The translations under genes were made by a program, and so were the position numbers. This document shows, piece by piece, positions 7,130 to 30,439 of a stretch of 64,000 bases of DNA. Under the pieces are notes generated by a model. It worked only from the letters and a program-made list of their open reading frames with translations. It made no database searches and had not been told where the DNA came from. The DNA is from Macrostomum lignano (lineage: Eukaryota), in NCBI GenBank assembly GCA_002269645.1, contig NIVC01000550.1, positions 1 to 64,000 on the forward strand, given 5' to 3'. Each line of letters opens with the position of its first letter. The first letter of the stretch is position 1.

Positions 7130-7385
7130 GCTTGCTTTCTTGGAAATATTTTCTATTTAGGGGGAATGTCTGTTATCTTTTTGAAAGCTATATTTTGTTG
7201 TCTGTTTATAGATTTTAGAAAAAAAGAGATTCATATAGCATATATCATTGTCCGTGACAATTTTACTTGAATAAGGTGATTTTTAAAAGTGAAGAAAGAA
7301 TTGGTTTAAGAAAATGTGTTTTTAATATTTTTTTTCCATTAACTAAATTTTGCTCCTTGCTTATTGGGCGCCCCGAAGGGCGACC
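7130..7385 (+). repeat. Partial copy of dispersed repeat family X (uninterrupted empty site for the piggyBac insertion)
   Basis: Its reverse complement matches 19628-19707 and continues without a gap into 24452-24630. The junction TTAA is at 7306-7309. Confidence 0.8.
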
Positions 7386-8226: not shown

Positions 8227-9289
8227 TAGCTTTTTGCAGCCCATTTAAGCTTACGCGCATTGACTGTAATCCAAGACACGTTTGCCAACCAATGTCACGG
8301 AGCTTTTGTCTATGGTAGAAAGGCTGGCACAGCGGCATTTAATTTGGTCCAACAAGCATCATAGCTTGGTACATAGCTTCTTTTGAAATTGCTGCGGAGA
8401 GGAACAAGATCTGCCCCAGAATTGTTAACCATATGCAAGGCTGTCGAACGAATGCCATTGGCTTATAATCGAAGCACTCCACAGAGGTGAACAGCCAAAG
8501 GACATTGCAAGGTTGCTAAATCATCCATCAGCGCGTTGAAACCACGCTGCCTCAAGGGGGGCATTGAAACCACGTTGAACAGAAAAAATCTTTATAAAAT
8601 CCGTCGAAGCAACATGTTTTGTAAGTTGTATCAAAAGAAGAGCTTTGTATCTGCTTCCAATAAAACGTTGTCACCATTTTAAAGTAAAAAGTGAAAAGTT
8701 CCTATCTCGCTAGAGCATTTTTTCGTGAAAATCAGCCTTTAATAAATTTTCCAAGAAACGAAGTGTCCCGTCCTTCTTCTAGTGGTCCTTGGTTGAAACT
8801 CTGCCGGCAGAGATTGCCTGCGAAAGGATGGCAACCGCCTAGGCAAGTTGACTCAAGGTCCTCAAAAAATTACGAACAATTTATGACACACTTCTTACAA
8901 AACGAATGTACGGTACAACACGAAAGTTCTTATAAAAATGCATTTTTAATCATTGATACAAGTTGCATAGCAGGGGGTGACCATCTGCCCTCCCTTCCTA
9001 GGGTCTTTTCGAGGGTCGTGGGGATGATGGGGTGGTCACCCCCTTGAGGCAGTGACCTGTGGTCACCCGGGGGCAGCCCCCCCTGCGCCGCCGCTGGGTA
9101 CACAACCTGCAGACAGTTGCGAGAAGGCAATAATTTGTCGAATGGCTCACGAGCGTTTGGACCAAATTAAATGCCGCTGTGCCAGCCTTGCTACCATAGA
9201 CAAAAGTTCCGTTGCATTGGCAAACTTATCCTAGATTAAGTTCAATGCGCCTAAACCCCAATAGGCTGCAAAAAGCTATGCTGGAAATA
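8227..9289. mobile_element. Relic DNA transposon bounded by diverged ~130-bp inverted repeats
   Basis: The reverse complement of 8227-8362 aligns with 9157-9289 (GGACCAAATTAAATGCCGCTGTGCCAGCCTT..CTACCATAGACAAAAG..GGCTGCAAAAAGCTAT). Inside is an HTH-like fragment LIIEALHRGEQPKDIARLLNHP (~8462-8527). Confidence 0.6.
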
Positions 9290-9899
9290 GCTTTCTAAGC
9301 CATAGAATTTTTGTTTTTTTGAGGTTCCACTTAAGACTACGCGTGCTGAAAGGCTGGGCGGCCCGCACTCTCAGAATGTCTATGGCCAAAATTACTATAG
9401 GCTCAGTACAAAGTCAAGCCAGCTAGCAAGAAATGCGACTGGACCTATGATAAATCCTCACTGGACACTACCAAAGTTTGTATAGAATGTTATTACGGAC
9501 GAAAGTGGAAACACATTGTTTAATCTATCTTATCACATTATTTCGTCTATGGCACAAGTTTTTAATTATATTAGAGTACAAAGCTATTGCTCAGAGATTT
9601 ATTGATTTCTAATTACATGTAGTAGGACAGGGGGGAGAGTTCCACATGACCTATAAATTTCACATCGCCTCAATGTTTCAAGCATCCAATTTCATAGCAC
9701 TCCACTTATATCTTTTGTAGGCGCTATATTACTTTCATTTACCTTCATCAATGGCACTACTAGAATCGAGACAAATTCATAATTCATTTAATAATTATTA
9801 TTAATAGGTTGAGTATTCAATTTAAGACACGACCAGTCATATTCAACCCATGCTTCTACAATTGTCTGGAGACCGAGTTGGATGACGTCATCCCATCAT

Positions 9900-10080
9900 C
9901 CAACCTCTACAATCTTCAAACAGTCTCATCATCCAGCCTACTCAGATTGTCTGGGGACTGTGTATAGGGAGCGCGTTGAATCCAAAATTTACTCAGCAAC
10001 ATTGAAAAGTCGCCACCCTTTACCCAGTGAGCAGTGTCTTTCGACTAGCGTCTATCAACTGCCCAACCATTTTGATATAA
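9900..10080 (+). mobile_element. Possible degenerate 3' fragment of a CR1/Rex1-type LINE
   Basis: TVYRERVESKIYSATLKSRHPLP resembles the C-terminal Y.ER..KK..I..D.SHPL motif. Short and decayed. Confidence 0.3.
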
Positions 10081-11440
10081 AAAAATTCTTTAAAAAACAA
10101 TACAAAACCCGGCGGAAGCTTCAATCCGTCCAATCTTTGCCCTCCGCTTTTCCAAATCTCTTCTCGCCCAGCCCAACTCTGCGTTAGCTCTGACCCCCAG
10201 CTTAAACCCTCTAACCGCGCCTTTCCACAATACCCCCACCCCACCCCATTTTATTGCTTTTCAGCCTATAGCTGCCCATGTACATTTTCGCTGAACCATT
10301 TACATGTAGCAAGTTGTTTACGCCTGCAAGAGCTTGTTTCTAAACTTAAACGTTAGATTTCTGCTTAGTCTCAGTACTTGACTATATGCTTTCTAGTTTT
10401 TGGGTCTTTAAATATGAAAAATATTGAACTTGTCTAAAATCTAGTTTGGTGCCATTTATAAAGGTATTAACAAACCGAAGCAAATTTGATTGAGGCTACA
10501 GATTCTACAATAACTAGATGGGCCTCTCAGGCATACTTAGTAAAGCAGCTTTCTACTTCCAGTTCAGTAGCAAAGAAGAATACATAAGCTATTTTTTTTA
10601 AATAAAGGCAGCTGAAATCACTTTGATAAGTTTAACAGCCAAGCTTGCAGGCGTAAACAACTTGCTAATTGGTTTAGCAATGCCAATAATGTACATTATA
10701 GCCAGTCCACTGAAATGTACGTGGCAGCTCAAGGCTAGAATTCCAAGAATGGCAATAAAAATTGGGGCGGGGGGTTTAGGCTGGGGGTAAGAGCCAATAA
10801 ATAAATGAACTTTGGCTTTCAAAATACAATAAATGCCCTCTATTTAACTTACTACTTAACTGAAAGTAGTTAACACGCAAATGTGCTGAGTGGCCAATAT
10901 TATAGTTATTCTAGTATCTGTGATTGTCGCTTATTCGAAAGAAACAAAAACTCTAATTCCAACGTTTCTTTGCTTGCTTTTTCTACGTTAAACTTAAATT
11001 TTAATAGCTTAGCAGTACGAGTAGTCACCATAGCAACAAAAAAAGACATGCAAGTGAAAACAATAGCAAATAATTATTTACTGTGTAATTTAACGGGAAG
11101 CCATTTGAAAAAAAAAATTGATAATAACAGAAATGAGACAAGGAAGCCAAAAAATAAGAGTGAAAAATAAAGTACACGTATATTTATTTGCAAATAATAC
11201 TACACTCTAGTCTCTGATCGCGCGTCAGAAAAACTCAATTATTGCTCAAAATGAGTAAGTGCCTTTATTAACAGCCGAGAGCTTACTCAAAAAGCGCAGT
11301 AAAGTCTTCTTTTTTTCTACTAAAGGTAGTCGAATTTTGATTAATTATATTATTAAAAAGGAGTAGGCAAGATTAGTTTTAATTAGAGACTGCCATAGCC
11401 TTTCTATCTATCTGCCATAGACACCAGAAGAACAGACAAA

Positions 11441-11633
11441 GGGCCGTATGCAGAAAGCCTAGTCCAGACTAGCTAGTCCGGACTTGGGTAGTTCAGTCTA
11501 TAGTCTATGGTCTAGCTAGCCTAGTTCTGCTATAGTAGACTGGTCTAACTTTGTGTTTCTGCATACCAAATCCAAGTCGAGACTAGCTTTTCAAGACCGG
11601 ACTACCCTAGACAGAGCTTTCTGCATACGGCCC
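11441..11633. mobile_element. 193-bp MITE, PIF/Harbinger-like
   Basis: Perfect 18-bp TIR GGGCCGTATGCAGAAAGC / GCTTTCTGCATACGGCCC. No clean TSD (flanks AAA / AAT). Confidence 0.8.
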
Positions 11634-11820
11634 AATATACAGATATTGGAAGCCCCGATCTATTTACCATCGGCACAAAAACTTTTTCTGTAGATTACTG
11701 GTACTGCTGGGGTAACCACTTGATTAACCATTTATCAGGTTATCTGACAAAAGCAATAAATTAGTAGTATCCAAAAAACAATGAAAACTATTAGTTACGG
11801 GCTCCGACAGTGCATGCCTG

Positions 11821-14800
11821 TCACATACCGTATGGTAGACCAGATGGGGGAGACTCGCTAGAATTAAAGAAACTCGAGCACAACCGGCGATCTCGAAGGT
11901 CACCCCAGCCGCCGTTCGGTTTCAAGGCTCTGGCTCGAATTTTCAGTTTGGCATTGAACATCAGCTGATCGGGATATAGTTTGGCAATATTGTTTGCCAG
12001 CATTCGATCTAGTTTGCTGCTTAACAATGCAGGATTGCAAACTTTGTTTTTGTGATGCACGCCGCATTGGCCAATGTGAAATACTCGAGGACTGATTCGG
12101 ATTACCATGGTTTGAAATGGTCGTTTAGTGCACTTAGTAAGGATGTGGTTCAGCGACCAGTCCCAGTTGTAGTCGTCAAATGAACAGAATGCCTGTATGT
12201 AGAGTGGAAGAGTGAATTTGCACGGACCAATCACAGACATGCAGGTCATTCTCCTACTGACCAATCACAGAGCATCGCAGGCTACTTATTCAGTCACCGA
12301 CCAATCAGAGAGCGCCGCAGGCTGTTTAGTCAGTCACTGACCAATCAGAGAGCGCCAAAGGATACTCAGTCAGTCACTGACCAAACAGAGGCGCAGACTG
12401 TTCAGTCAGTCACTGACCAATCAGAGAGCGCCACAAGCTGCTCAATCAGTCACTGACCAATCAGAGAGCGCCACAAGCTGCTCAATCAGTCACTGACCAA
12501 TCAGAGAGCGCCACAAGCTGCTCAATCAGTCACTGACCAATCAGAGAGCGCCAAAGGATACTCAGTCAGTCACTGACCAATCAGAGAGCGCCACAAGCTG
12601 CTCAATCAGTCACTGACCAATCAGAGAGCGCCACAAGCTGCTCAATCAGTCACTGACCAATCAGAGAGCGCCAAAGGATACTCAGTCAGTCACTGACCAA
12701 TCAGAGAGCACCACAAGCTGCTCAATCAGTCACTGACCAATCAGATAATTAATAACCAAGAGTTAACTCACCGGTAGACAAGGTTTTATCTGGTCCCAAA
12801 TCGCACGCGAAAAGGACATGCCCATATTGTGAAAGCTGGATACCCACTTGTCAACAACAACCTGCAATTTAATCAATAGTTTATCCTAATCAGACTGTTC
12901 ATTTGTACTTGTAGACAAAACTGCCGTTACAATTTTTCTTCATGAAATGATTTTACAAGTTTAGTAAAATTATTATCTATTTAAATAAGAAAATATCCGA
13001 TAAATAGCATTTATTAAGCTGACAATAGTAAACAATACAGGTAAACTTTGCAGTCAGATTTGCAGCATAAACTGTAAGGAAGAATGGAAGATAGACAAAC
13101 ACAAAAAGTTTGTGTGCACTTTTCGTTAGACAAGAAAGCCTTCGCTAGAACTAAAATTACTTAATTATGTAAACAGTCACACAGACTGTAGTTAAATCTA
13201 TTCACAAGCTAAACACAAGCACTATCAGCATTTATTAGGTGCAAGACAGGAAAACAAGCGGGCAACATACCTGCGCTGTGTTGCGAGTAAAGTCCGGCTT
13301 CTTTTCGTAAGTGCCCAGCGTTAGAATTTCCACATTCTGGCTTAGGCTGAAATATTAGTTTAAAATTTAACCTTTTGCTTGTATAAAACAGATTTTAAAA
13401 CCGATCAAGGGTGCCAAAAAGACCTCCAGCTAGAAAACCGAACGGACCTCCAGCCAATCAGGTTAAACAGAGCTCCAACCAATCAGAGAAGATCAAACCG
13501 ACCTCAAGCCAATCAGAGAAGACCAAACCGACCTCCATTCAATCATAGATCAAACCGAAATCCAGCCAATCAGAAAAAACCAAACCGACCTCAAGCCAAT
13601 CAGAGAAGACCAAACCGACCTCCATTCAATCATAGATCAAACCGAAATCCAGCCAATCAGAAAAAACCAAACCGACCTCAAGCCAATCAGAGAAAACCAA
13701 ACCGACCTCAAGCCAATCAGATAAGACCAAACCGACCTCCGTTAATCAGAGAAGATCAAACCGACCTCCTGCCAATCAGAGAAAACCAAACCGACATCAA
13801 TTTAATTAGAGAAGATCAAACCGACCTCCAGCCAATCAGAGAAGACCAAACCGACCTTAAGCCAATCAGAGAAGACCAGAGCTCTAGCCAATGAGAGAAG
13901 CTTAAGCGAATCCCACCAGAGAAATTCAAAAAGATTATCAGCCAATCAGAGAATTCCAAACCACTCATTGAATCAGAGAACTGCAAGCGCCTCAGTCAAT
14001 GAGACAATAATTAACCAATCCTTAATCAATAACAAACGAGTTTATTAATTACTAACAATCAAGTCACTTACTCTTTCCTAGCCGCAACCATGAGCCTTAG
14101 CATGTGCAGCAGATCTTCAACAACATAATGATCCTCTTCCAAAAAGACAAATTGGCCAGTAAAATTAGCTAAGACGGGACTCCGTTCGAATAGTCGATTC
14201 ATTTTATACAACCAGTGATGTTTAGTCTGCGTGTACTTCGACTCCCGGTAGTGCCCGTACTTATCCGGCCATTCGGCATTGTTGCAGCCGAGCTGGCGCG
14301 CTCTGTACAGTCCAGCATCTCGGGGACAATCGCGCGGATCGTTGCCAGGAAAACGGTCAAAATAAATCTGCTTAGTATAGGGATAGAAGATCTGCAACGG
14401 GGAGTTCAAAGTTACCAGACTTTGGAGTTTTGGCAGTTGATCAATTATTAAAATAAAGAGCAATTGCTGAAGTTCTAAATACGCGCCTTAGAGTTCACTT
14501 GGACTATAGGCCTAGCCCAATTCCAGCTGCAATACAGATCACGTGACAGCCATATATTACTACTGACTGCTACTATAACCCTAGCCAATTCCAGCTGCAA
14601 TACAGATCACGTGACAGCCATATATTACTACTGACTGCTACTATAACCCTAGCCAATTCCAGCTGCAATACAGATCACGTGACAGCCATATATTACTACT
14701 GACTGCTACTATAACCCTAGCCAATTCCAGCTGCAATACAGATCACGTGACAGCCATATATTACTACTGACTGCTATTATAATCATAGCCCAATTCCAGC

Positions 14801-17338: not shown

Positions 17339-20002
17339 TTCAATTGCTATATCAGGATTTTCTTGTTTTTCTTTTCAAGCAAAAATACAATTGCTTTTAA
17401 AAGGTGAGAAGAAGTGGCAGGAAATAGTCGAGGCGCGGGGGGTTGGAAACCCCCCTCAGTCTGGCTTTTATCGATCAGAATTTGACATGAAATTGGTAAA
17501 CGCAGGTAGCAAAGTTTGACTCTTGCTCTTTCAATTATTAGCTTCCCTTTACTTCAAAAATCAGGTCACCGGACCTCTTAACAATTTTTTCATAGTCACG
17601 TTTTGTAAGTGTATCCAATACACCCCTCTTAAATAAATAAACTTATCTTAAATAAACTACTTTAGTTTATAATCATACTTTAACATAATTTTAATAGCAA
17701 AGTTCTCATTCAACTAGTTAATAAACATTTATGAATTTGTTTTGATATCTAGAAACAAAATCTAAATATATGCTTGCATTATATATGGAAGGCCTCCTTT
17801 GTCATGCAACTAAGAGATCTATTTTGTTAAAAGTAAAATTTAGAGATAACATAGTCTAAGACATATTGCAGATGTTTATCTAAAGAATTTAGGTTGAAAA
17901 TTAGCAACTAAGTAAGTAAGCCTTCAAATGAGGCTCATCAAACAATATAGCTCCAACTTGCTAGAATACTCTTGAAGACATCTCCAATGCCAAAATGAAG
18001 CCAATGATAGAAACAAATAATAGAAATGTGTCATGTGCAACAAAGTCCTGAAGTGCAATGGCTTGGTCATGCAGTCTTCATGTGGTACTTTCAATATTTG
18101 ATAAGCTTATATATGTCATACTGACAAGGATGCTAGCAATAAACAGTAAACTCTCACAATATGAGATCTGAGAAAATGCAAAGAAGCAAAATTTGATCTA
18201 GTAGCAGAGATTGCAGATGCTACAATTCTTTGTCTAGATGCCACAGTATTTATCAATCCACCTAAAGGGTTGCAGTTTGCTAAAGTTGCTAACTAAACTT
18301 AAGAAGAATGCAACCACAGCATCTCAGAGACCTAAGCTTTGAGCTCAAGCAGGATGCTCTTCCATGTGAGACCTAATCTTTGTTTTTAATAAGCAGTTGT
18401 AGCTTCTGCACATTATTTAAACCATGAAAGAAATAACAGTAATAGACTGCTAATCCAAGCAGAAAGCATATTTTGATGTGAGCTTATACTATGCTAGGAC
18501 ATAACTTTCAGAGGCAGGGGGCAAAAATGAAAATGAGACAAAAATGACTGTCTATGGCAGTCATGAGCCAATCAAATTTCAATTAACAAATTAGAAAATA
18601 ACAAATAGTTAATAAATAAAACAAATATCTGTATATCTTAAAAACTACTTATACTGTAATGAAAATAACAGAATAATTACGTTAAAAGCACCCATAGGTA
18701 AGGACCCATAGTATATATATATACTAACTTTTTGTTTGTAATATGAATTTTGGAGGCTGAATAATTGTTTATAATGAATATGCATCATCATTGGATGGGC
18801 TCATAACAGCCTACTGATTGTATTCAACAGTGAACTCTATCTCTGCCATCAATATTTGTAACTGCAGCTTCTATCTATAAGTTCTTTTTTTCAATGGATG
18901 TTTAAAATTGATATCATGTTTCTTTGAAATATAGCAATAAACAAAATTACACTAAAACTGACATCCCATGTTAACTCTTTTTAACACCTTGCAATATTTA
19001 ATTATGAAAAATTAGCTTTGCTAGCTATGTAGCTATACCTTATCTTTTCTTCTCAAAAAGTTGTTTTGTCTACTAGCAGACAAAAAGGCGGCAGATGAAA
19101 TGACCAAGCACCATTCAAAAAGGAAGATTATTTTTAAATTTATTAGGGGGCCTAATAATACTTCATTACTGCTTTATCGTAAAAAAACAAAAAAACTTGC
19201 AAATAATAGACTTGTTGCAATGTTTTATATACATTTGGCCCCAAAGAAACCTGTCACTAAAATGGATATCATAGAAATGACTATCATAAAACTAATTAGC
19301 AGTCTAGCACCAAATTCCAAAGTTACTAATTTCCATAAATGGGCTTCAACTAGGCCTAAGCCTAGTCTCTTAGTGTTTTTTATTTGTTAGCTGCTATTGC
19401 CACCAAAGTTGTTATAATAGGCTCTAGAACTAAATAGTCCTAAATATTACCAAGTTGTACTAGAGTACTAAACTTAACTATAATTAAGTTAAATTAATCT
19501 GGACCTAAGCCCAAGGAATTTAATTCACTTGGTAATAGCTACTTTAGTAACAAAGTAGATTCATAACTGTCAACACTTATCTCCTTACTTATGATAATTA
19601 AACTTAACAACTACTAGCAATCTAGTGCGGCCTCCCTTTCGGGGCACCCAATAAGCAAGAAGCAAAAATAGTTCATAGAAAAAAATGTAAAAAGCACATT
19701 TTCTTAACCTTTTCAAGCCTGAATTCCTAAATAGAAAGCTCTGTTCCTGCCGGCATGGTCAGCAGAGCTGACCATAGACTATTTCAACTTTTCAGTGAAC
19801 TGAATTGCACTGCCACTTCTGCCGATAAGCCAGCCATCGCTGGTCTAATCTAGGGTTGAAGGAGAATGTACATGTGGAATGGGTTGCACACACGCTTATC
19901 AAAACTGTACAAGACTGGCCATAGACAGTCCAGTTTTAGTATATTAAAGGGCTGTGCCAAATTCTGTACAATTCTATTCATGTAATTCAAATCAATCCAA
20001 AT

Positions 20003-21649
20003 ATGGATATTCTGTTGACTTCCGACTCCGAAAGTGACACTGGAATAGCAGAGAACTCCGAGTCGTCTGAGTCGGTCACTATCAGCGAAGTAGAAGACGA
20101 TTGGCAGTTTGTGGAGCCAGGCGAAGACATTGTTGAAGACGGCCCCAGTTTCACTAGAATTTCGGGTGTAAACCCCAGCATTGTCCTTCCTGAAGACCGT
20201 GAAGACATCCAATATTTTCTACAACTGTTTCTAACCGATGAGCTGCTGGATAAGATCGTGGAGTGGACAAACGCTAAAGCTTGGGCTGAGTATGAGCAGG
20301 CGACACATGATGGAGAAGATGTTTCGAGCTTGCTGAAGTCATGGAAGGACACAAACCGCAGTGAGATATCCAAGCTGTTGGGTATGTACCTGTTCATGGG
20401 CATCTCACGGAAGCTGGAACTGCATGATTACTGGAGCACCAGTGTCATTGACAGTACTCCGTTTTTTCAATCGCCCAATGGCTTGACCCGTGACCGATTC
20501 AAGCAGCTGCTGGCCTTCCTTCATTTCTACGATGCAGGAGCACCCGCCTCGAACAACCCACTGCACAAGATTCGGCCGCTGCTCTGTCTGGCTCAGCAGC
20601 TCTGCGCGAACGTGTACCAGCCGGAGCAGCAGGTCAGCGTCAACAAGTCCCTGATTCTGTACAAGGGGCACCTTCAGTTTAGGCAGTACATCCCATCGAA
20701 GAGAGCCAGAGTTGGAATTAAAATGTACTGCGCCTGTGAGTCTGCATCTGGCTATCTGTATAACTTTCTAGTACATTCGACTGCTGAAGAGAACTCTCAT
20801 TTTGGCGACGACCTCGGTTGTGACCAGCTGTCTCTAAGCGAGAAAATCGTAGTGCACCTTTGCAAGGACCTGCTCGGTTTCGGCTATCACCTTTTCGTCG
20901 ACAAGTGGTTTGCCTCAGTACGGCTTGCGACTTTTCTGTACGAATGCAGCACACTACTGACAGCAACTGTTCGAGCCGACCGTGGAGTGCCGTTGGCATT
21001 GCGCAGTTAGCAGGTGCCGTTGAATGACATAGTTTTCATGAGGAAGCTGCCAGTGCTGGCCATGAAAATCCTGGAGCGCAAGGAAAGCGGCTTGAAAACA
21101 TTCTTCATGATCGACACCCATGGCTCAGCTCAGAAAGTAGCGACGAACCGAATTCGCAAGAATGGTGAAGCTGTGCAAGTGCAGAAAAGCGCCTCGAACC
21201 TGCTGAACAACCGCTGCATGGGAGGCGTTGACCGACTCGATGCCATGCTGAAACCATACGACAGCTGCCGCAAAACCTACAAGTGGTTTCATAAGTTGGG
21301 GTTTCATCTCTGCCTGCTGCTTGTACACAATGCATGGGTTGTATACTCAAAGCACGGTTGCTGGCTGCAGTTCTTCAAATTCCTGGAGAGCTGTATCACC
21401 CTACTGGTTGACTCCACGGGACCAGGAAGACAGCGAACGGCAGCTAGGCAACCAGCGGCGGCCGCAGCTCAGCAGCACTTTCCATCAAAGCTGCCTCCGA
21501 GGGAATTGTACCCGAGGCCGGTGAAGCGATGCCGCGTGTGCTACCGCAACGGCACTGCAAAGTGCACCGTGTTCTGCTGCAGTGCGTGTCTGAATGCACC
21601 TGGACTGTGCCCAAGTCCCTGCTTTGAACGGTGGCATGTGAATCACTGA
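20003..21649 (+). pseudogene. piggyBac (PGBD4-like) transposase, inactivated
   Basis: Acidic N-terminus; LFLTDELLDKIVEWTNA; MGISRKLELHDYWST; GLTRDRFKQLL.FLHF; QYIPSKRARVGIKMY; HLFVDKWF; MGGVDRLD; C-terminal RCRVC..CC..C..LC..CF..WH domain. TAG stop at 21008-21010. The first catalytic DES motif is changed to NKS (20642-20650). Confidence 0.9.
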
Positions 21650-22167
21650 ATTAAAGAACTCCTTTCACCAGCCGTACTATATAATTCGCGTTTGTATTCG
21701 GCATTGACTATTAATTTTTTACCTTTATTTAAGACAAAAAATAATTAAATGTCCAACTGCGGCACTCTACCACAATGTAACGATATGTACCGATTTTTTT
21801 TGGCAGCAATTGCGGCTTCGTGGCTTCAGCTTACGCAATTGCTGCCAAAAAAAATCGGTACATGTCATTATTGTACCCTTTTCATTATTGTACCCCCCTG
21901 TCTATGGCCCAGACATGTATAGTGCGGATGCTGAGTATGAAATGCGATTGTTGCCGGAATGCGCTTTGAAAGGGTTGTAGAGATAATCAATCGTCTATGG
22001 CAAATTTAGTTGCTCTCTAAATGAAAGGGTTGTAGAGATAATTAATCGTTTATGGCAAATTTAAAGGACAGTGAAGACAGCTAGCCTGGCTGCCATGAGT
22101 TAATTCTCAAGTTGATTTTGAGCTTGAATTAATTCTCCTATTCGGAGTGCAAATAGGAAAACTAGCT

Positions 22168-23584
22168 ATGATTCGCTACGCAAACATTCCTGGCGGAGAA
22201 ATATGTGGACTCTCCACGGACGAGTTGGCTTTTGTCACCCGAGAGTCGAGCACGCGCTACGTTCTGGAGATGGACAACCTGGATGCGTCGTCCAGTTCCA
22301 ACGGGCTGCCTGAGCTAGGTAGCGAAGATCTGGAAATGTTGGACCGACTTGAGAGTGACTCAGTGCCGAAATCGACCGAGACGCAACGGAAGCTTCACGT
22401 GGCAAGGTTCCGACAGTTCCTCAACGAGAAGGGGCTCTGCCAGGAGTTTGAGCGTGTTCCGGATCGATTTTTGAACGATTATCTGAGGCTTTTCTATTCA
22501 TCCCTTCGAAAGCAGGATGGAACTTACTATGCGCCAAAGTCTCTCATCTGTTTTCGTGCGGCTATTCAACGCCACCTGCAATCCCCATCCGTTAATCGCC
22601 AGGTGAACATCATTACCGGAGAAGCCTTCAAGCGTTGCAATGGCGTTCTTGTCGCCATGGTGAAAATGTACATGGAAGGACACGTCGAGAAGGTAGACAA
22701 ATACGAAGCTATTTCCGAGGATGACATGCAAACAATTCGCGCATACTTTGATCGAACGTCCCTTTGTAAACTGCAGGACGAAAACATTTTCAACGTTCTG
22801 CTCCATTTCGCACTGCGAGGCCGAGAAAATCTGAGAGAGTTGACACCTGGATGTTTTGAGATAGTGTCAGAAGGAGGTACGGAGTTTGTACGCGTCGCTG
22901 TCGCCATGCTGTCGAAAAATGTTAAAGCGTCGTTGAACGAGAAGGCATTCAAGGATCTCAAGTTAGCTCGGATGTACAGCGTGCAAGACAAAGCTGTTTG
23001 TCCCGTCGAAGCCTTTAAAATGTACGTCTCTCAACTACCGAATGGATGTGAGGTGTTGTTCCCAAGGCTCAATAAGTCTGGCTTCTCAGCCTGCCAACGA
23101 CTCGGTAAAGATTCACTTGGAGACTTCATGAAGAATCTGAGTGCATGTCTGGCTCTGCAGCGGAAGTACACCAACCATTGTGTGCGAGTAACCACGGTGA
23201 GTAAAGATTGCATGGCCTACTCACTTCAGTAAAACTGTAAGAATACTGTCTTACCCAACTGCTGAAACTTAGGTGAACTGTTTGGCCAAGGCCGGTTTCG
23301 ATAATCAAGCGATTACACTAATGACAGGACACAAGAATTCGAGCTCAGTGGATGTATACAAGCGGCGAGACATGGACTGTGTGGCCCGAATGAGCGCTTG
23401 TCTGGCTGCCTATGGGTCCAAAGTCACCAAGATTGACGACGATGCGGAATCCACCATCGAAAGTGTGACAACTGGGTCTGATAGAGGCGAGCTGATGAAA
23501 GCACCCGAGGATGGCCAAGACCTGCCGAGAAGCCTCTGTGGTAGTCAGTTCCACAACTGCACATTCAACTTTTACGGAAAGTAA
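22168..23584 (+). CDS. Crypton-like tyrosine recombinase (DUF3504/KCTD1-ZMYM-QRICH1-type YR domain); join(22168..23196,23273..23584), 446 aa (412 aa if the ATG at 22270 is used)
   Basis: Open frame with a 76-bp GT-AG intron (ACG|GTGAGT..TTAG|GTG, phase 0). Motifs: LRLFYSSLRKQDGTYYAPKSLICFRAAIQRHL, FALRGRENLREL, SKN, CPVEAFKMY, TNHCVRVT, ITLMTGHKNSSSVDVY. This gives a complete R-K-HxxR-H-Y catalytic set. Confidence 0.85.
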
Positions 23585-23833
23585 AACAATTGATTCGATC
23601 AGTTTGTTCTACGAGCGTACATGTAGTTGCGTCTCAAAATCATAAATTTTTTGTTGCTTTTGGACAAATATCTTCTTTTGCTTGAACTTTAACTTTAACT
23701 TTCCCTTTAAGTTTATAGTTCGAAATTAATTCAACAATAAACTGCATCTTTCTTCTGTGCCATTGTTAGTACATGAAAGTTGCTCTAGTGGTCGCTACAG
23801 AGTGCTACAGACTGAGTGAGTGTGCTATTTATT

Positions 23834-24312
23834 CGGCAGGAGTAACTATAACTGTCTTATTAAGTCAAAATGCCTCATCAGCTACTTAGTACTACTACTT
23901 TGGTATTTTTTGGGTGGGCATTTTTGCGACTTCCTTGGTTGGCCACCAAATTGGTCGGCTGGATTGGCCAACTCGGCTGACTGTTGCACATGTATGTGCT
24001 TGCTATTAGAGATTCTTGCTATCTATAGGATGCTTGCTATCTGCAAGATGCTTGCTATTTAGGTGGATGCTTCTACAATATCAGGGGATGCTTGCCATCT
24101 GCAGGATGCTTGCCATCTGGGTGGATGCTTGCTATCTAGGTGGATGCTTCTACAATATTTGGAGGATGCTTGTAAGCTATCTGGGTGGATGTTTGCTATT
24201 TGGGTAGATGCTTGCTATCTGGGTAGATGCTTGCTATCTGGGTGGATGCCTGCTATCTGGGTAGATGCTTGTTATCTGGGTGGATGCTTGCTATCTAGGT
24301 GGATGCTTGCTA
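23834..24312 (+). repeat. Truncated copy of family X (28S-like terminus + 19-bp GATGCTTGCTATCT tandem repeats) inside the piggyBac unit
   Basis: Near-identical inverted counterpart of ~24680-25293. Confidence 0.85.
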
Positions 24313-24451
24313 GCAGCAAGCATGAAATGTTTGGCAGGAAAGGAGCTGCAATTCTGCGCTTCACTGGCCATAGACTACCAATTTTTTTCTCGTCACCTTC
24401 TATTCTATGGCTATGGTCAGCTCTGCTAGCCACCCGGCATCTAAGGGTTAA

Positions 24452-25300
24452 CACCAATTCCTTCTTCCCTTTTAAAAATCACCTTATTCATATAAAATTG
24501 TCACAGACAATTTGTTATGCTATTTGCTATGAATCTCTTTTTTAAATTAACAAAAGACAACAAAATATAGCTTTCACAAAGATAACAGACATTCCCGCTA
24601 AATAGAAAATATTCCCAATACAGCAAGCATCTCTTCAGATAGCAAGCACACCCCTCCAAAAGTAAGCAATCACAGATAGCAAGCATCCCCTAATACTCGT
24701 AGCAAGCATCTACCCAGATAGCAAGCATCCACCCAGATAGCAGGCATCCACCCAGATAGCAAGCATCCACCTAGATAGCAAGCATCCACCCAGATAACAA
24801 GCATCTACCCAGATAGCAGGCATCCACCCAGATAGCAAGCATCTACCCAGATAGCAAGCATCTACTCAAATAGCAAACATCCACCCAGATAGCTTACAAG
24901 CATCCTCCAAATATTATAGAAGCATCCACCTAGATAGCAAGCATCCACCTAGATAGCAAGCATCCACCTAGATAGCAAGCATCCACCTAGATAGCAAGCA
25001 TCCACCCAGATGGCAAGCATCGTGCAGATGGCAAGCATCCCCAGATATTGTAGAAGCATCCACCTAAATAGCAAGCATCTTGCAGATAGCAAGCATCCTA
25101 CAGATAGCAAGAATCTCTAATAGCAAGCACATACATGTGCAACAGTCAGCCAAGTCGGCCAATCCAGCCGACCAATTTGGTGGCCAACCAAGGAAGTCGC
25201 AAAAATGCCCACCCAAAAAAATACCAAAGTAGTAGTACTAAGTAGCTGATGAGGCATTTTGACTTAATAAGACAGTTATAGTTACTCCTGCCGTTTACCC
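24452..25300 (-). mobile_element. Non-autonomous repeat family X, 5' part (its 3' part is 19622-19703, split off by the piggyBac insertion)
   Basis: Read on the minus strand: 28S-like terminus, 19-bp tandem repeats, an AT-rich body shared with 7130-7310, then after the insertion a hairpin GGGTGCCCCGAAAGGGAGGCC followed by GCACTAG. This resembles a Helitron-type 3' end, but the class is uncertain. Confidence 0.6.
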
Positions 25301-25479
25301 AAAGTTGCGTTAATTTTGCGTTAGGGTTTTTTACATGTAAGTCGCTTTTTTTGGCCAAAAACTACGTCACATTTTTGTTAAAACTAAGTCGCATGGCCAA
25401 CCGAATTTTGGAGGTTGCGCATGTATGAGCAAGCATCCCTGGATAGAAAAAATCCCATACATATAGCCAAGCTTATCAA

Positions 25480-26280
25480 GTGTAGTGCAATAATCCTTTG
25501 TTTGCCATGTGCAGTAATCCTTGGTTTATCAAGTGCAGTAATCCCTGGTTTATCAAGCGCAGTAATCCTTAGCTTATCAAGTGTAGTAATCCTTGGTTTA
25601 TCAAGTGCAGTAATCCTTGGTCTATCAAGTGCAGTAATCTGTGGCTTATCAAGTGCAATAATCCTTGGCTTATCAAGTGCAGTAATCCTTGGTTTATCAA
25701 GTACAATAATCTATGGCTTATCAAGTGCAATAATCCTTGGCTTATCAAGTGCAGTAATCCCTGGTTTATCAAGCGCAGTAATCCTTAGCTTATCAAGTGT
25801 AGTAATCCTTGGTTTATCAAGTGCAGTAATCCTTGGTCTATCAAGTGCAGTAATCCCTGGTTTATCAAGTACAATAATCTATGGCTTATCAAGTGCAATA
25901 ATCCTTGGCTTATTAAGTGCAATAATCATTGGCTTATCAAGTGCAGTAATCCTTGGTTTATCAAGTGCAATAATCTGTGGCTTATCAAGTGCAATAATCC
26001 TTGGCTTATCAAGTGCAATAATCCTTGGCTTATCAAGTGCAATAATCCTTCGTTTATCAAGTGCAATAATCTGTGGCTTATTAAGTGCAATAATCCTTGG
26101 CTTATCAAGTACAATAATCCTTGACTTATCAAGTGCAATAATCCTTGGTTTATCAAGTGCAGTAATCCTTGGTTTATTAAGTATAGTAATCATTGGCTTA
26201 TTAAGTACAGTAATCCTTAGTTTATCAAGTGCAATAATCTTTGGCTTATCAAGTGCAATAATCCTTGGTTTATCAAGTAA
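25480..26280. repeat. 24-bp minisatellite (TTATCAAGTGCAGTAATCCTTGGT)
   Basis: About 33 tandem copies are visible. Confidence 0.95.
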
Positions 26281-27880
26281 TAATCCAGTCTTTTTAATTA
26301 GTCTTTCAATAAAAGCTTTCAATAAAAAATTATTTTTTTTTATTTCACACTACTAATTTTATGCTACTAATATTTATAAATTAATTTGTAGCACTTATAA
26401 TTCAATACTCACACTAAGTCAATTGAGTAAAAGTCACACAAAGTAGTTATGACATTATCAATTTCTTAGGCAAGTCAGTACCAGTGTCTATTAAAGTTAG
26501 CAATATGGTTACATAATATAAATTAAGAATATATTGCACTATGCTTCCACACTATGCTTTTGATACTGTGATGCAATTCAATTCAGTGTCAAAATTTAGC
26601 TAGTATACAGACAATAAATAAAAAGCCTATTGCGATGCAATCTATTTTAGTATCAAAATTCAACTAATGAGTTTTTTTCTAGCATTTTTATAATACATTT
26701 AAAGTCAAAAGAGCTGCTTCAACTTTGCAAAAAAGCATGTTTTTTGAATATTTAATCCCTTTAGCATTGAGAAATTTCTTAGCCACAATGCATGTACCAT
26801 CATGGAAAAATTTCTAATTGAATGGTGCAAGTTCAAACAAAATTGGCTGAGCCATTTTTGCTAAAATTGTTTATGCACAAACATACATACATAGCAGATT
26901 TTCATTTTTGGATTTTTTTGGATATGGATTTTAGTTCAATAGGCTAATTAACAATTCAAATACTTTTTCAAATTATGGTTTCTTTTTTGTTAAACTAAAA
27001 TGAAATTTAAAGTAAAAAAATTAAAAACAATGTGTATTAGGAATTAAAAATTTAAAGCAATTAGGTCTCCGGAAAAAATAGATTTTGTAGGCCTAATATC
27101 TAATTGCTGACTCAGAGATTCTAATGTATACAATATTTGGTCTATTATAGCATAGGCCTGGAATTTCTACATATATTTGATGCACTTAGATTGGTAAAAC
27201 ACTTTTAAACAAGTTAAACATATGCATATACACTGTACTGTACACATTTGTCTACCACTAACTTAAATCAAATCATTACTGGACATTAGGTCTATAGGCC
27301 TAAGCCTTAGCAATCCTTATATTATAATTATATTACAATTATATAAAAAATAATTAGGCCAATTGTTAATATTTTCAAAAAATAACTTAATGTGCGAAAC
27401 TACAGGATAGCTGCAAAAAATGGCTTATTGTCAACAGAAAAAGCATTCTGCTAGGTTATATGAGAAAGGCTGATTGAGTGGTCACTGGTCAGATTGTCAT
27501 ATTCCACTTCGTCATATCGGATGACAAAGTGACTAGAAGATTGTGTTATGGTAGAGATGGAGTTCCACTTAAATCCTGAAACTATCCCAAGGACATGGTT
27601 TTGTATGTCAGCTAGTAACTTTTGTAGCTAGTAGTAGTAGTAGTAGTAGTAAGTTGGCTCAGGCAAGAAGCCTGTTTGGCCAATATATTTCTGTGTATTT
27701 AAGATTACTTCAGGAATAGGAGACAAAATTTTAGCACTAGTTATTTAATTACGATTAGTACGAGTTTTGCAATATGGTATTTGAAAGAATGCGGAAATGT
27801 TATTGACAAAACTTGGACAACTAACGAAGCGAAAGAAAAAGCAAGGAGTTAAAAAAAGTATTGCGTGAAATTTATGTATG

Positions 27881-29136
27881 TGAAGTGAGCACTAGTTTAG
27901 TGTTAGGTGCCCCCTTTGTCAGCTGTGCCCTGCGCCCTTCTGAGCTGTTGGCTGCCGCTGGCCGCAGCTCTCCCTCTCGCTCTCCCTCTCTCCCTCCCCC
28001 TCTCTCCCTCTCCTGCTCCCTTCTCTCCCTTTCCCTCCCTCGTTGTCCTTTTGTCTGCCTGCGCTCCCTTTTGTCCCCCTTTTTCCGGTTCGTTTGCGTT
28101 CCCATCGTCTGAGCTTCTCCGCTCAGCCTGTCCTTGATTCTTTGTCTGTCTCCATCCCTCCCCCTTTCTGTATGGCTGTGTTCTCTTGGCTCGAGTCCAG
28201 CCAGTTCTGGCTGTACTCTCTCTGTCCGGCCTGTACGGTAGCGGATCACGTGCCCCGGCACTCTGTCCTTTTCTTGCGCAGCCTTGTGCAATCCTGAGTG
28301 TCAGTCTCTAAATTAGGAATAGCATCCTTGCCTCTCTGGCGGGGGCTCCAAACTTGTTTCTAAAAATAGAACAGAATCATGCCAGATTGGGGACAGTGAG
28401 AGCGGCCTTGCGCACTCTGCCGCAATGGGGTGTTGCACTGTATGGTGAAATCGATCCGCTACCCTATATGTACGGGCTTCTCGTGCCTATGTTTGGCAAC
28501 CTGCCTTTTTTCGATTCAACCCGTCTACCCATCTCTTAACTTTCTGCAACTTTGCTAAGTTGTAAGTCCAACGCACCTTGCGCTAGTCCTTCGCCAACTT
28601 GTCTGTCTTCTGATCTATCTTCGACTATCAAAAGTCGGACTGCGTGTCTGAGTGAGTGCGGAACTCCCGACAGAACTAACCGATAACTAGCACAGTTCCT
28701 CATCCCCGCACTTGAGCCCGGCAGGAACTGCTGACAAGGTGTGCACTGGTGTGAGCTGTCAAATCTGCACAGCGTGCTGAGTTCTCGTGTCTCGTTTTTT
28801 CGCTAAGCCCGGAGTCTTCCTCATCGAAGGACAAGATCCGAGCGAGCTGGTGGCAGCACTACCAACGCTACTAAGAATTGCTAGAAGGCTTCCTGGGAGA
28901 GTCTACCAAGAGCTCAAAGTAGGCAGCTCATGTGACTAACAGGGAAGTAGCCGGAACCAAATACTTCATTGGTGGCAGCGGTGGGATTCAAAGACCTACC
29001 CGGCCACCTCAAGGCAACCCCGAGAGACCAACAAATACTTCATTAGTGGCAGCGGTAGGATTCCAAGACCTATGGCTATAAGAAATAAGAATAAGAATAA
29101 GAATAAGAATAAGAAACCACCAACAACAATACATCA
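27881..29136 (+). repeat. 5' LTR (1256 bp)
   Basis: Homologous to 37182-38311 up to CAATACATCA and followed by the PBS. Confidence 0.9.
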
Positions 29137-29137
29137 T

Positions 29138-29155
29138 TGGTGGCAGCGGTGGGAT
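29138..29155 (+). promoter_or_regulatory. Primer-binding site complementary to the tRNA-Leu 3' end
   Basis: TGGTGGCAGCGGTGGGAT is the reverse complement of ATCCCACCGCTGCCACCA, the known 3' end of tRNA-Leu(AAG/UAG) with CCA. Confidence 0.8.
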
Positions 29156-29219
29156 CCGACTTCGAAACACCCAAGCCAACCGCCCTTTTTCGAGAACGAC
29201 TCTTCAGTCAGCTACGAGA

Positions 29220-30296
29220 TCAGCATGTTTAACGAGCGAGACGAGAGCCGGAGTAGCAGCCGGCTGGATCAGTACATCAGCAGTTCGAGGCCTACGGCAG
29301 CAGACGAAGCCGCGGCAGCAGGAATGACCGGTGACTTCTGTCAGAGGCCCGCACCGAGGCGAAGCGTACGAAGCAAGGTGTCCGAGGACCTGCCCGATGA
29401 GCTTCTGCGAGGCTTGGATGACCTTGGCCAGACTGTCAGACCATTGGACCTGAGGACCATGATGGCAGCTCTGCAGCAGCAAATAGAGCGACCGGTGAGT
29501 AAACAGATTAGGATTGTTAAATTTACTCCAAGTCAGGACATTCATGTCTGGCTTGCCGCGTTTGAGCAGCGTTGCGAGATGGAGTGAGTCGTCAACCAAT
29601 TCAAGATGAAGCAGCACCTCATTGCGAGTCTAGATCTGTCTACTGCATATCCAGCCCTGCTCAGCATGCATCTGCCAAGGTTCGCCAGCTACGAGGAGGT
29701 TAAGCAGCATTTAATCGAGTGATTTGCGTGCCACGGTGGCGCTGATGAGTATCAAGAGCTTCTAAGGAGGCATCAGCAAGGCAAGAATGAGACCATAGAA
29801 GAGTATGCTGACTCGCTGCGCACACTAGGGGAGCGTGCATACCCGAGGATGCACCCCGAGGACCGCGAGAAGGAGCTGGCTGATCAGTTCCTTGCCAGCC
29901 TACGAACAACCCCAGATTTGTGAGAACGACTGTATTGGGTGCGCCCAAACAACTTGCTGGCTGCAATTCGAGAGCTGCACCGTCTAGAAGGTGCCAGAGA
30001 GCTGGCTCAGCACTCCGCTCAACCCCCCGGTTAGGATGTTGGACGGGGAGCAGGACGCTCGCCCGATACCAGACGCCACTGCCCAAGCCCTATTGGCTTT
30101 GACTGAAGTACTCGAGAAGCAGCAGAATCTGCTCAGCGACTTGGCTCAGCGTGATCAGCAGCAGCAGACGAGCCCGCCGACGAAGGCTATGATCTGCTAT
30201 GGCTGTGGTCAACCCGGCCATCGTAACGCCCAATGCCCGCTCTGCCAGAACCAGGGAAATGGCCAGCCGGAGAGCGCCCACGGCACCGCCCTCTGA
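29220..30296 (+). pseudogene. Gypsy gag with zinc knuckle, disrupted
   Basis: DIHVWLAAFEQRC, QGKNETIEEYADSLRTLGERAYP, and CYGCGQPGHRNAQCP (CX2CX4HX4C, ~30194-30238). Several TGA stops and a frameshift. Confidence 0.8.
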
Positions 30297-30439
30297 AGAG
30301 CCCAAGCGCCGGCTACTTGGCAGACTCCGAGAGGTCACGAGAAGAAGAGGATGTTGGCTGCGCAGGCGCAAATGCCCAGTCCGACAGTCGCTCGTCAGTA
30401 AGTGGCGCGGAGCCCGGAGGTTTCGTGGACACCTCCGAT

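What the first reader, a model, noticed from the sequence alone, without database searches (positions are those of the whole stretch)
19704..24451. piggyBac-bounded composite unit carrying an intact Crypton-like tyrosine recombinase
Seen: a 4.74-kb segment is flanked by TTAA on both sides. Its ends share a ~29-bp subterminal inverted repeat at asymmetric distances from the termini, as piggyBac ends do. The flanks (..CACATTTTCTTAA | TTAACACCAATTCC..) rejoin to match an uninterrupted paralog at 7260-7380 (reverse complement ..CACATTTTCTTAAACCAATTCTTTC..). Inside are a dead piggyBac transposase and a fully open YR gene. Inference: either a piggyBac that mobilises a second, unrelated recombinase as cargo (a DDE + YR hybrid element), or a later Crypton insertion into a resident piggyBac. 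I know of no described DDE/YR hybrid of this type, but I could not search.
Basis: partly seen in the sequence, partly recalled or inferred. Interest (0 to 1): 0.8.

Follow-up and report, generated by a model that had tools for sequence, protein, structure and literature searches.

The report
PiggyBac transposon carrying a Crypton recombinase
A 4.7-kb piggyBac-type jumping gene in a flatworm (Macrostomum) genome carries its own broken transposase gene plus an intact-looking gene for a Cre-like tyrosine recombinase of the Crypton kind. Such composites are rare but already described (MarCry in Fusarium), and it cannot yet be shown that this pair has spread as one unit.

Summary
Positions 19708-24447 are one insertion at a TTAA. 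TTAA flanks both sides, and a paralogous empty site lies at 7130-7380. The ends match those of three related plain piggyBac elements. Inside is a piggyBac transposase pseudogene with one stop and the first catalytic Asp changed to Asn. There is also a two-exon gene (76-nt intron) for a 446-aa Cre-fold tyrosine recombinase (YR) that keeps every conserved residue.

The YR is an addition. The three closest piggyBac relatives (50-57% identity) are plain 2.3-3.1 kb elements. YR relatives elsewhere sit alone or beside other YR genes, never beside piggyBac.

A Macrostomum lignano gene model (A0A1I8JK10) shows a second copy with the same gene order. Its roughly 97% identity is what that genome's triplicated paralogous blocks predict, so independent transposition is unproven.

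The novelty claim is too strong. MarCry-1_FO (Mariner+Crypton) and Tec1/Tec2 are described DDE+YR elements. This would be the first piggyBac/animal version.

A 480-bp inverted copy of the flank sits inside the element, which points to local remodelling. The decisive test is a genome-wide copy census, which these tools cannot run.

The parts
19704..19707 (.). Left TTAA target-site duplication
   Evidence: The paralogous empty site has a single TTAA at 7306-7309.
19708..20002 (+). piggyBac left end and 5' region. Tip is CCTTTTCAAGCC. After a ~40-nt spacer comes the subterminal repeat 19748-19777, which ends in CCATAGAC. A second CCATAGAC lies at 19919.
   Evidence: The architecture matches the left ends of L001 (9534-), L013 (129-) and L012 (184-).
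20003..21649 (+). piggyBac transposase pseudogene (548 codons). In-frame TAG at 21008-21010. First catalytic Asp is Asn (codon 214, 20642-20644) and the adjacent Glu is Lys. Conserved Tyr402 is Asn. The second and third Asp (D300, D410) and the Cys-rich C-terminal domain are kept.
   Evidence: Pfam. PDB piggyBat 9c0f at 1.2e-39 and T. ni piggyBac 6x67 at 5.2e-24. Alignment A2.
21772..21873 (.). Long imperfect palindrome in the spacer between the two genes: 28-nt perfect arms around a 19-nt centre. Role unknown.
   Evidence: DNA fold -39.9 kcal/mol, z = -12.
21967..22063 (+). Two 42-nt direct repeats with a 55-nt period. Each contains an end-like GAAAGGGTT and a C/TTATGG motif. This is probably native piggyBac 3' sequence. 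The inserted block most likely starts just downstream.
   Evidence: L013 has its right end 373 nt after the stop codon.
22168..23196 (+). YR gene, exon 1 (codons 1-343). It holds the N-terminal core-binding-like domain, Arg217 (RGRE), Lys250 (KNVK) and His337-x-x-Arg340.
23197..23272 (+). 76-nt intron (GTGAGT...TTAG). Removing it restores the frame. The alignment to intronless homologues is gapless across the junction.
   Evidence: The same acceptor is used by gene model A0A1I8JK10.
23273..23584 (+). YR gene, exon 2 (codons 344-446 plus the stop at 23582-23584). It holds His363 and the nucleophile Tyr372. An AATAAA lies at 23736-23741.
23834..24312 (+). 'X-in': a unique segment plus a 19-nt minisatellite. 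It is an inverted partial duplicate of the flank segment 24757-25293. It ends at the near-palindrome ATGCTTGCTAGCAGCAAGCAT (24304-24324).
   Evidence: An X-like copy in L001 (14611-14761) extends 43 nt beyond X-in's left boundary.
24313..24447 (+). piggyBac right end. GGCAGGAAAGGA lies 107 nt before the TTAA (104 nt in L013). Then come CCATAGAC (24368), the subterminal repeat 24411-24440 and the tip GGCATCTAAGGG.
24448..24451 (.). Right TTAA target-site duplication
24452..25336 (.). Flank, not part of the element. Host repeat H2 (to 24628) runs into a 19-nt minisatellite and the X unique segment ('X-out'), which is the probable template of X-in.
7130..7380 (-). Paralogous empty site of the host repeat (85% identical), uninterrupted across one TTAA.

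Best explanation
This is a decayed copy of a piggyBac-superfamily transposon of Macrostomum lignano or a very close relative. Between its transposase gene and its right end it has acquired a roughly 1.7-kb gene unit for a catalytically complete, Cre-fold tyrosine recombinase of the Crypton-A/DUF3504 kind.

Shown: the whole 4,740-bp unit lies between one pair of family-typical piggyBac ends and one TTAA duplication.

Inferred: a piggyBac transposase cut and pasted the unit, with the YR gene already on board as a passenger, into a TTAA of an older repeat. This is the same logic as MarCry-1_FO, where a Mariner moves a Crypton.

Inferred: the YR plays no part in that movement. It has its own start codon, intron and poly(A) signal.

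Shown: this copy can no longer move itself, because the transposase has D214N and a stop.

Inferred: it could still be moved in trans.

Inferred: after arrival, a break near the right end was filled by copying about 480 bp of the neighbouring flank in inverted orientation.
For: Ends, TSD and empty site.

End architecture is shared with three plain relatives: L001 (M. lignano, 3.1 kb), L013 (2.3 kb) and L012 (~2.5 kb). So the ends are real piggyBac ends and the extra 2.2-2.4 kb is an addition.

YR is a genuine recombinase. All 26 invariant and 35 nearly invariant family columns are kept, including R217, K250, H337, R340, H363 and Y372. The profile aligns HxxR and GH..Y to XerA. The AlphaFold model matches Cre over 342-368 columns at E 5.6e-9.

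Second copy: UniProt A0A1I8JK10 (P0102) joins the transposase C-terminus to YR exon 2 in the same order and orientation, from an independent assembly.
- It has Gln where the window has the stop.
- At 9 of 10 transposase differences it keeps the family-consensus residue while the window is derived.
- That pattern fits a younger copy of a lineage whose transposase was still under selection.

No stand-alone YR homologue from M. lignano appeared among 120 hits, whereas a plain piggyBac of that species did.

Precedent: MarCry-1_FO has multiple copies with TIRs and TA duplications, and made 22 new insertions in an evolution experiment (PMC3212892, PMC12310939).
Against: Only one full copy could be examined.

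The second copy is about 97% identical in protein. That is what M. lignano's three paralogous genome blocks predict (SNP rate 2.2% overall, 1.1% in coding sequence; PMC10733133). It may be the same insertion duplicated with the genome.

The 9:0 asymmetry has other possible causes: a collapsed, consensus-like older assembly, or locus-specific C>T decay.

In this copy the YR shows no hit at conserved sites, while the transposase shows three or four plus a stop. That would also fit a YR that arrived later. The difference is not significant (my rough estimate, p about 0.1).

Only one partial gene model of this family exists in the searched proteomes, which suggests very low copy number.

The inverted copy of the flank inside the element shows the locus was remodelled in place.
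Confidence: 0.45

Rival explanations
1. One-off nesting. A plain piggyBac (about 2.4 kb) inserted at this TTAA. Later a Crypton integrated, or a YR gene was copied in during break repair, into its 3' region at this locus. The inverted flank copy may have come in the same event. The second copy (A0A1I8JK10) is then the same locus duplicated by the recent whole-genome duplication. The composite never transposed.
For: The closest piggyBac relatives are all plain.

YR relatives elsewhere live without piggyBac, alone or in YR-YR pairs.

The divergence of the second copy equals the genome-wide paralogue divergence (PMC10733133).

The YR looks less decayed than the transposase.

X-in is a 98%-identical inverted copy of sequence only 445 bp away, so at least one templated insertion happened at this very locus.

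Only one gene model of the family was found.
Against: 9 of 10 transposase differences are derived in the window and none in the other copy. Two relics decaying equally since duplication should not show this (binomial about 0.002), unless an assembly or mutational bias explains it.

No stand-alone Crypton/YR source copy from M. lignano was seen among the homologues.
Confidence: 0.4
2. Domesticated locus. The transposase-YR pair, or one of the two genes, is a host-co-opted gene. After genome duplication one paralogue (the window) is pseudogenising while the other (A0A1I8JK10) stays under purifying selection.
For: The decay is asymmetric between the two copies. The YR is intact, with an intron and a poly(A) signal. 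The gene model splices the transposase to YR exon 2.
Against: The ends and TTAA duplication are still recognisable, and the unit is embedded in repeat-rich DNA.

Known Crypton-derived host genes have lost the catalytic residues (PMC3212892), whereas this YR keeps all of them.

No orthologues were detected in other animals at high identity.
Confidence: 0.05
3. Assembly artefact. The transposase part and the YR part come from different loci and were joined in a repeat-rich, triplicated genome assembly.
For: The inverted 480-bp repeats and minisatellites around 23.8-25.3 kb are hard to assemble. The M. lignano assembly is known to be error-prone (PMC10733133).
Against: An independent assembly's gene model (A0A1I8JK10) also links the transposase C-terminus to YR exon 2.

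The inverted repeat has a 445-bp non-palindromic spacer, unlike fold-back read chimeras.

The flanks rejoin precisely on one TTAA.
Confidence: 0.03

Closest known systems
MarCry-1_FO (Fusarium oxysporum; Kojima & Jurka 2011, PMC3212892; active in PMC12310939)
   Same: A DDE-transposase DNA transposon that contains a Crypton-type tyrosine recombinase gene inside one pair of terminal inverted repeats. The target-site duplication is that of the DDE partner, so the DDE enzyme does the moving.
   Different: MarCry's partner is Tc1/Mariner (TA duplication, 16-bp TIRs). Its YR is of the fungal CryptonF group. It is proven multi-copy (46 copies) and active. Here the partner is piggyBac (TTAA), the YR is of the animal DUF3504/QRICH1-related kind, the host is a flatworm, and only one copy plus one gene model are known.
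Tec1/Tec2 transposons of Euplotes crassus (as summarised in PMC3212892)
   Same: They encode both a DDE transposase and a tyrosine recombinase in one element.
   Different: They are ciliate elements with a Tc1/IS630-type transposase. The YR is thought to resolve transposition intermediates. They are not related in sequence, as far as tested here, and have no TTAA specificity.
Plain piggyBac-like elements of the same clade (L013, L012 from a JGI metagenome; L001 = M. lignano NIVC01001014.1, protein BOX15_Mlig019614g1)
   Same: Transposase is 50-57% identical. TTAA duplications are present (seen on both sides in L001 and L013, on the left only in L012). Tips are CCTYTTC... in L001 and L013 (CCCCTAC in L012). 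The palindromic subterminal motif ATGGTMAGCAnTGCTKACCAT(AGAC) has a long spacer on the left and a short one on the right.
   Different: They are 2.3-3.1 kb with only 290-960 bp after the transposase stop and no second gene.
Animal Cryptons (CryptonA) and Crypton-derived genes (QRICH1, ZMYM2-4; DUF3504)
   Same: The YR has a Cre-like two-domain fold. Many homologues carry PF12012 (DUF3504) and PF25561 (QRICH1). The solved QRICH1 structure appears among the fold matches.
   Different: Cryptons move by their own YR and have no TIRs. Domesticated genes have lost the catalytic residues. Here the residues are intact, but the unit is bounded by piggyBac ends and no Crypton termini can be defined.
Tn3-family transposons with a tyrosine resolvase (e.g. 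Tn4430 TnpI; from my own knowledge)
   Same: A DDE transposase plus a YR in one element, with repeats next to the YR gene.
   Different: These are bacterial and replicative, and the YR resolves cointegrates. piggyBac is cut-and-paste and makes no cointegrate, so that role is not expected.

Membership tests
piggyBac superfamily transposon | TTAA target-site duplication with precise insertion | tested here: met
   TTAA lies on both sides. The paralogous empty site has one TTAA.
piggyBac superfamily transposon | Transposase with a DDE_Tnp_1_7 core and a C-terminal Cys-rich domain | tested here: met
   Pfam 6.6e-65 and 1.9e-7. piggyBat 9c0f at 1.2e-39. Cys/His columns are invariant.
piggyBac superfamily transposon | Intact DDD catalytic triad and open reading frame (autonomy) | tested here: not met
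   The first Asp is Asn214 (all 8 homologues have S-x-D-E). There is a TAG at codon 336. D300 and D410 are kept. This copy is a family member but not autonomous.
piggyBac superfamily transposon | Terminal plus asymmetrically spaced subterminal inverted repeats | tested here: met
   The layout matches three related elements.
Tyrosine recombinase (Cre/Xer/integrase fold) | Catalytic R..K..HxxR..H/W..Y and a two-domain fold | tested here: met
   R217, K250, H337, R340, H363 and Y372 are invariant in A3. XerA alignment. Foldseek to Cre at 5.6e-9 with TM (target) 0.63-0.68. Catalysis itself was not tested.
Crypton (CryptonA / DUF3504 group) | YR belongs to the DUF3504/QRICH1-related clade | tested here: inconclusive
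   About half of the 120 homologues carry PF12012 and/or PF25561. The window protein itself hits QRICH1 at 24.8 bits, below the 30.8 cut-off, and has no DUF3504 hit at E<=0.01. No reference Crypton sequences were available for a tree.
Crypton (CryptonA / DUF3504 group) | Repeated mobile unit with its own termini, without TIRs, moved by the YR | not testable with these tools
   No other copy of the YR unit could be retrieved, so its boundaries inside the piggyBac (about 22.06-22.15 kb to 23833) cannot be defined.
MarCry-type DDE/Crypton composite | DDE transposase gene and Crypton-type YR gene inside one pair of TIRs | tested here: met
MarCry-type DDE/Crypton composite | Several copies at independent sites, each with the DDE partner's target duplication | tested here: inconclusive
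   One extra copy is inferred from A0A1I8JK10, but its flanks are unknown. Its divergence equals that of whole-genome-duplication paralogues (PMC10733133).
MarCry-type DDE/Crypton composite | Mariner-type transposase, TA duplication, CryptonF YR | tested here: not met
   The partner is piggyBac with TTAA. It is an analogue of MarCry, not a member.

The most novel reading that the evidence does not exclude
An active piggyBac-Crypton hybrid family exists in Macrostomum. In it the tyrosine recombinase is not mere cargo but part of the life cycle. It might act on the long palindrome and repeats between the two genes, or on excised copies, giving the element a second mode of integration or copy-number gain. 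That would make it the first animal DDE+YR dual-recombinase transposon.
Probability: 0.1. Interest if true: 0.75.

Novelty: new variant of a known kind. Interest (0 to 1): 0.4.

Why it matters
If the unit proves to be multi-copy, it would be the second known DDE-transposon/Crypton composite. It would be the first with a piggyBac partner and the first in an animal. That would show that DDE transposons have captured tyrosine recombinases more than once. It would also offer a tractable system: M. lignano is transgenic-ready and piggyBac works in it (PMC8717057). That system could be used to ask what a second recombinase does for a cut-and-paste element.

If it is a one-off nesting, it is an ordinary nested repeat. 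It would still be useful as a dated marker of local rearrangement in a triplicated genome.

Tried and rejected
1. Exact-protein look-ups of A0A1I8JK10 and of the YR exon-1 ORF found nothing on record. No flanks of a second copy could be obtained.

2. I looked for piggyBac+YR co-occurrence elsewhere.
- Four piggyBac relatives (L001, L002-L005, L012, L013) have no YR.
- Five YR relatives with up to 10 kb of flank (L006-L011, L014-L022) have no piggyBac.
- So there is no independent support for a conserved pairing.

3. I considered a relic piggyBac right end inside the element, which would imply capture by end-bypass.
- The pattern CTATGG-N20-30-AAGGGTT occurs only at 21995-22031 and at the true right end.
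- However, the internal match is created by the 55-nt tandem duplication, the pattern was chosen after seeing the data, and the region may simply be native 3' sequence. I left it as a lead, not a claim.

4. I considered X (23834-24312) as an independent transposon insertion and rejected it as the simplest reading.
- It is a partial copy that stops inside the family's conserved part (L001 homology runs 43 nt further).
- It is 98% identical to a copy 445 bp away in inverted orientation.

5. I considered a fold-back sequencing artefact and rejected it, because the spacer is 445 bp and not palindromic.

6. The script machine was lost. Shuffle statistics for the internal end-like motifs, CpG counts and dN/dS-type comparisons could not be run.

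7. A window-versus-L001 megablast found nothing. It therefore gives no information on species identity.


Full report
**1. What is in the sequence**

The window is repeat-rich eukaryotic DNA. It holds many minisatellites, LTR-retroelement RT/RNase H ORFs and a MULE transposase.

The segment 19708-24447 is bounded by TTAA at 19704-19707 and 24448-24451. Its tips are CCTTTTCAAGCC and, on the other strand, CCCTTAGATGCC.

A 29-30-nt subterminal inverted repeat lies 40 nt inside the left tip and 7 nt inside the right tip.
- It spans 19748-19777 and pairs with the reverse complement of 24411-24440, about 26 of 29 identical positions with one 1-nt gap.
- Its local alignment scores 38, against 13.4 +/- 2.1 (maximum 22) for shuffled ends.
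- Its 21-nt core occurs nowhere else in the 64 kb, with zero expected.

The two flanks match one continuous paralogue on the other strand.
- 19634-19707 matches 7380-7306, and 24448-24628 matches 7309-7130, both at 85%.
- The two matches overlap on a single TTAA.

**2. The ends are genuine piggyBac ends**

The transposase search led to three related elements that I could read in full or nearly so.
- L001 is from the M. lignano assembly GCA_002269645.1. Its element spans 9534-12636, 3.1 kb, with the transposase 50% identical.
- L013 is from a metagenome. Its element spans 129-2473, 2.3 kb, 55% identical, with TTAA on both sides.
- L012 spans about 188-2733 and is 57% identical.

All three share the window's layout. 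The layout is TTAA, a CCTYTTC-type tip in L001 and L013 (CCCCTAC in L012), a ~40-nt spacer, then a palindromic motif ending in CCATAGAC on the left. The same motif sits a few bases from the tip on the right. The window's last 135 bp are colinear with L013's last 134 bp: GGCAGGAAAGGA lies 107 and 104 nt before the TTAA respectively.

None of the three has a second gene. They have only 290-960 bp after the transposase stop, against 2.8 kb here. The YR is therefore an addition to this lineage, inserted between about 22.06-22.15 kb and 24312.

**3. The transposase is dead, and more so than noted**

The ORF 20003-21649 has Pfam DDE_Tnp_1_7 (6.6e-65) and the Cys-rich zf-Tnp_2. It matches the solved piggyBat and T. 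ni piggyBac transposases.

Besides the TAG at 21008-21010, the first catalytic Asp is Asn. The window reads S-V-N-K-S where all eight homologues read S-x-D-E-S. The invariant Tyr402 is Asn. D300, D410 and the Cys/His ligands remain.

From the codons, 11 of 13 inferred changes are C>T or G>A, several of them at CpG.

**4. The second gene**

The gene consists of 22168-23196 plus 23273-23584, joined across a 76-nt GT..AG intron. It encodes 446 aa. Unspliced, the frame stops at 23230-23232.

About 120 homologues (28-52% identical) were found, mostly on 2-kb marine metagenome or run assemblies. Many carry DUF3504, QRICH1 or Phage_integrase domains.

In a 27-sequence alignment the window protein keeps all 26 invariant and all 35 nearly invariant positions. 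These include R217 (RGRE), K250, H337-x-x-R340, H363 and Y372. The alignment is gapless across the exon junction. A profile of the alignment aligns the HxxR and GH...Y boxes to XerA (E 0.002). An AlphaFold model (mean pLDDT 76) matches Cre over both domains (E 5.6e-9, 342-368 columns). It then matches XerA, IntI, XerH, Tn1549 Int and the Crypton-derived QRICH1.

It is a sequence-complete Cre-like tyrosine recombinase of the Crypton-A/DUF3504 neighbourhood. Formal Crypton membership could not be tested, because no copies or termini are available.

An open frame is weak evidence of selection. At about 2% divergence, roughly one stop per 450 codons is expected by my estimate.

**5. Where relatives of each part live**

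piggyBac relatives have no YR nearby (section 2; also L002-L005). YR relatives on the longer contigs sit alone or next to another YR/DUF3504 gene (L006, L014, L018, L019). A 20-kb genomic neighbourhood (L017) has none of either. The pairing is therefore not a conserved architecture.

**6. A second copy, and why it does not settle the matter**

The YR search returned UniProt A0A1I8JK10 of Macrostomum lignano. This 360-aa gene model runs from the transposase (from residue 289) to ...ERWH and then directly into YR exon 2 (VNCLAKAG...FNFYGK). It uses a GT after the His codon and the same acceptor at 23272/23273.

This shows three things.
- The window comes from M. lignano or a very close relative.
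- In an independently assembled copy the two genes have the same order and orientation, which argues against a misassembly.
- That copy has Gln where the window has the stop.

Of 10 transposase differences, the window is derived in 9 and the other copy in none, polarised by eight homologues. This is the pattern of an old copy versus a young copy of a lineage whose transposase was still selected, and it favours transposition of the composite.

However, about 85% of the M. lignano genome exists as three paralogous blocks, with a 2.2% SNP rate (1.1% in coding sequence) (PMC10733133; hidden tetraploidy, PMC5704211). A second copy at about 97% protein identity is exactly what a duplicated single insertion would look like. 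The asymmetry could also arise from a collapsed, consensus-like older assembly or from locus-specific C>T decay. I could not obtain its flanks.

**7. The inverted flank copy**

Positions 23834-24312 consist of a unique stretch followed by a 19-nt minisatellite. They are the inverted duplicate of 24757-25293, which lies 445 bp away outside the element. Identity is 98% in ungapped blocks of 244 and 209 nt and 91% gapped.

A 78%-identical relative in L001 shows that X is a dispersed repeat. X-in stops 43 nt short of that family's homology. X-in ends at a near-palindrome, ATGCTTGCTAGCAGCAAGCAT, at its junction with the piggyBac right end.

The simplest reading is inferred, not shown: a templated, strand-switching repair that copied the neighbouring flank into a break near the right end after the element had arrived here. 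It means the element in its present form has probably not moved since.

**8. Mechanism**

Shown:
- TTAA-specific insertion of one block with family-typical piggyBac ends.
- Two genes inside it.
- A dead transposase and a sequence-intact YR.

Inferred (0.45): the YR unit was already inside when a piggyBac transposase pasted the block here, as in MarCry. The YR is a passenger with its own intron and poly(A) signal (AATAAA at 23736-23741).

Main rival (0.40): the YR entered a resident piggyBac at this locus, and genome duplication made the second copy.

Minor rivals: domestication (0.05) and assembly artefact (0.03).

The long palindrome at 21772-21873 (DNA fold -39.9 kcal/mol, z = -12) and the 42-nt repeats between the genes have no assigned role.

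**9. Comparison with what is known**

DDE+YR elements are described.
- MarCry-1_FO is a Mariner-Crypton composite. Four copies more than 97% identical have 16-bp TIRs and TA duplications (PMC3212892).
- It has 46 copies and made 22 new insertions in an evolution experiment (PMC12310939).
- Tec1/Tec2 of Euplotes also encode both enzymes (PMC3212892).

A piggyBac/animal version is therefore a new variant of a known kind if it is a family, and an ordinary nested repeat if it is not.

**10. Verdict**

Interest is 0.4. The decisive step is a genome-wide copy census, which these tools do not allow.

Noticed in passing
window 20003-21649: Of 13 amino-acid changes inferred on the window's transposase lineage, 11 correspond to C>T or G>A transitions, several at CpG (for example CGC>TGC, CGG>TGG, CCG>CTG, CAG>TAG). 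This suggests deamination-type decay of this copy.
   Followed up: partly
window 21641-21646 and 23272/23273 (gene model A0A1I8JK10): The M. lignano gene model splices the transposase, after ...ERWH at a GTGAAT donor, to YR exon 2. This gives a transposase-YR C-terminal fusion. It could be an annotation artefact or a real read-through transcript.
   Followed up: no
window 8270-9225: An element of about 0.95 kb with inverted termini of about 65-75 nt (8291-8352 versus 9157-9221) that also contain CCATAGAC. That 8-mer occurs 12 times in the window against 1.6 expected, clustering at 8308-9552 and 11415-11510 as well as in the piggyBac.
   Followed up: partly
L006 444-3781; L014 286-3595; L018 466-3457; L019 554-3817: In marine metagenome contigs the YR homologues often sit in pairs (tandem or convergent), 400-900 bp apart and 30-40% identical to each other. 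This is an unexplained recurrent YR-YR arrangement.
   Followed up: no
L002 228-6431 and L003 143-6346: A piggyBac transposase gene (42% identical to the window's) lies 600 bp downstream of, and in the same orientation as, an LTR-retroelement pol (RT-RNase H-integrase). The arrangement is identical in two independent metagenome assemblies.
   Followed up: no
window 24614-26360 and 6707-7070: Paralogous copies of the host repeat H are followed by different minisatellites: 19-nt and 24-nt units here, and a different 24-nt unit at the paralogue. The 19-nt array seems to grow out of an AGCAAGC motif present in the paralogue.
   Followed up: partly
window 21772-21873: A 102-nt palindrome (28-nt perfect arms, 19-nt centre) lies between the two genes. 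It is unique in the window, and no function or relative was found.
   Followed up: partly
window 28000-36000, 45324-46719, 3221-5464: Other mobile-element remains: LTR-retroelement RT/RNase H ORFs, a MULE transposase fragment and an RNase H ORF. Large minisatellite arrays lie at 12.2-16.9, 51.9-56.3 and 61.2-64 kb.
   Followed up: partly
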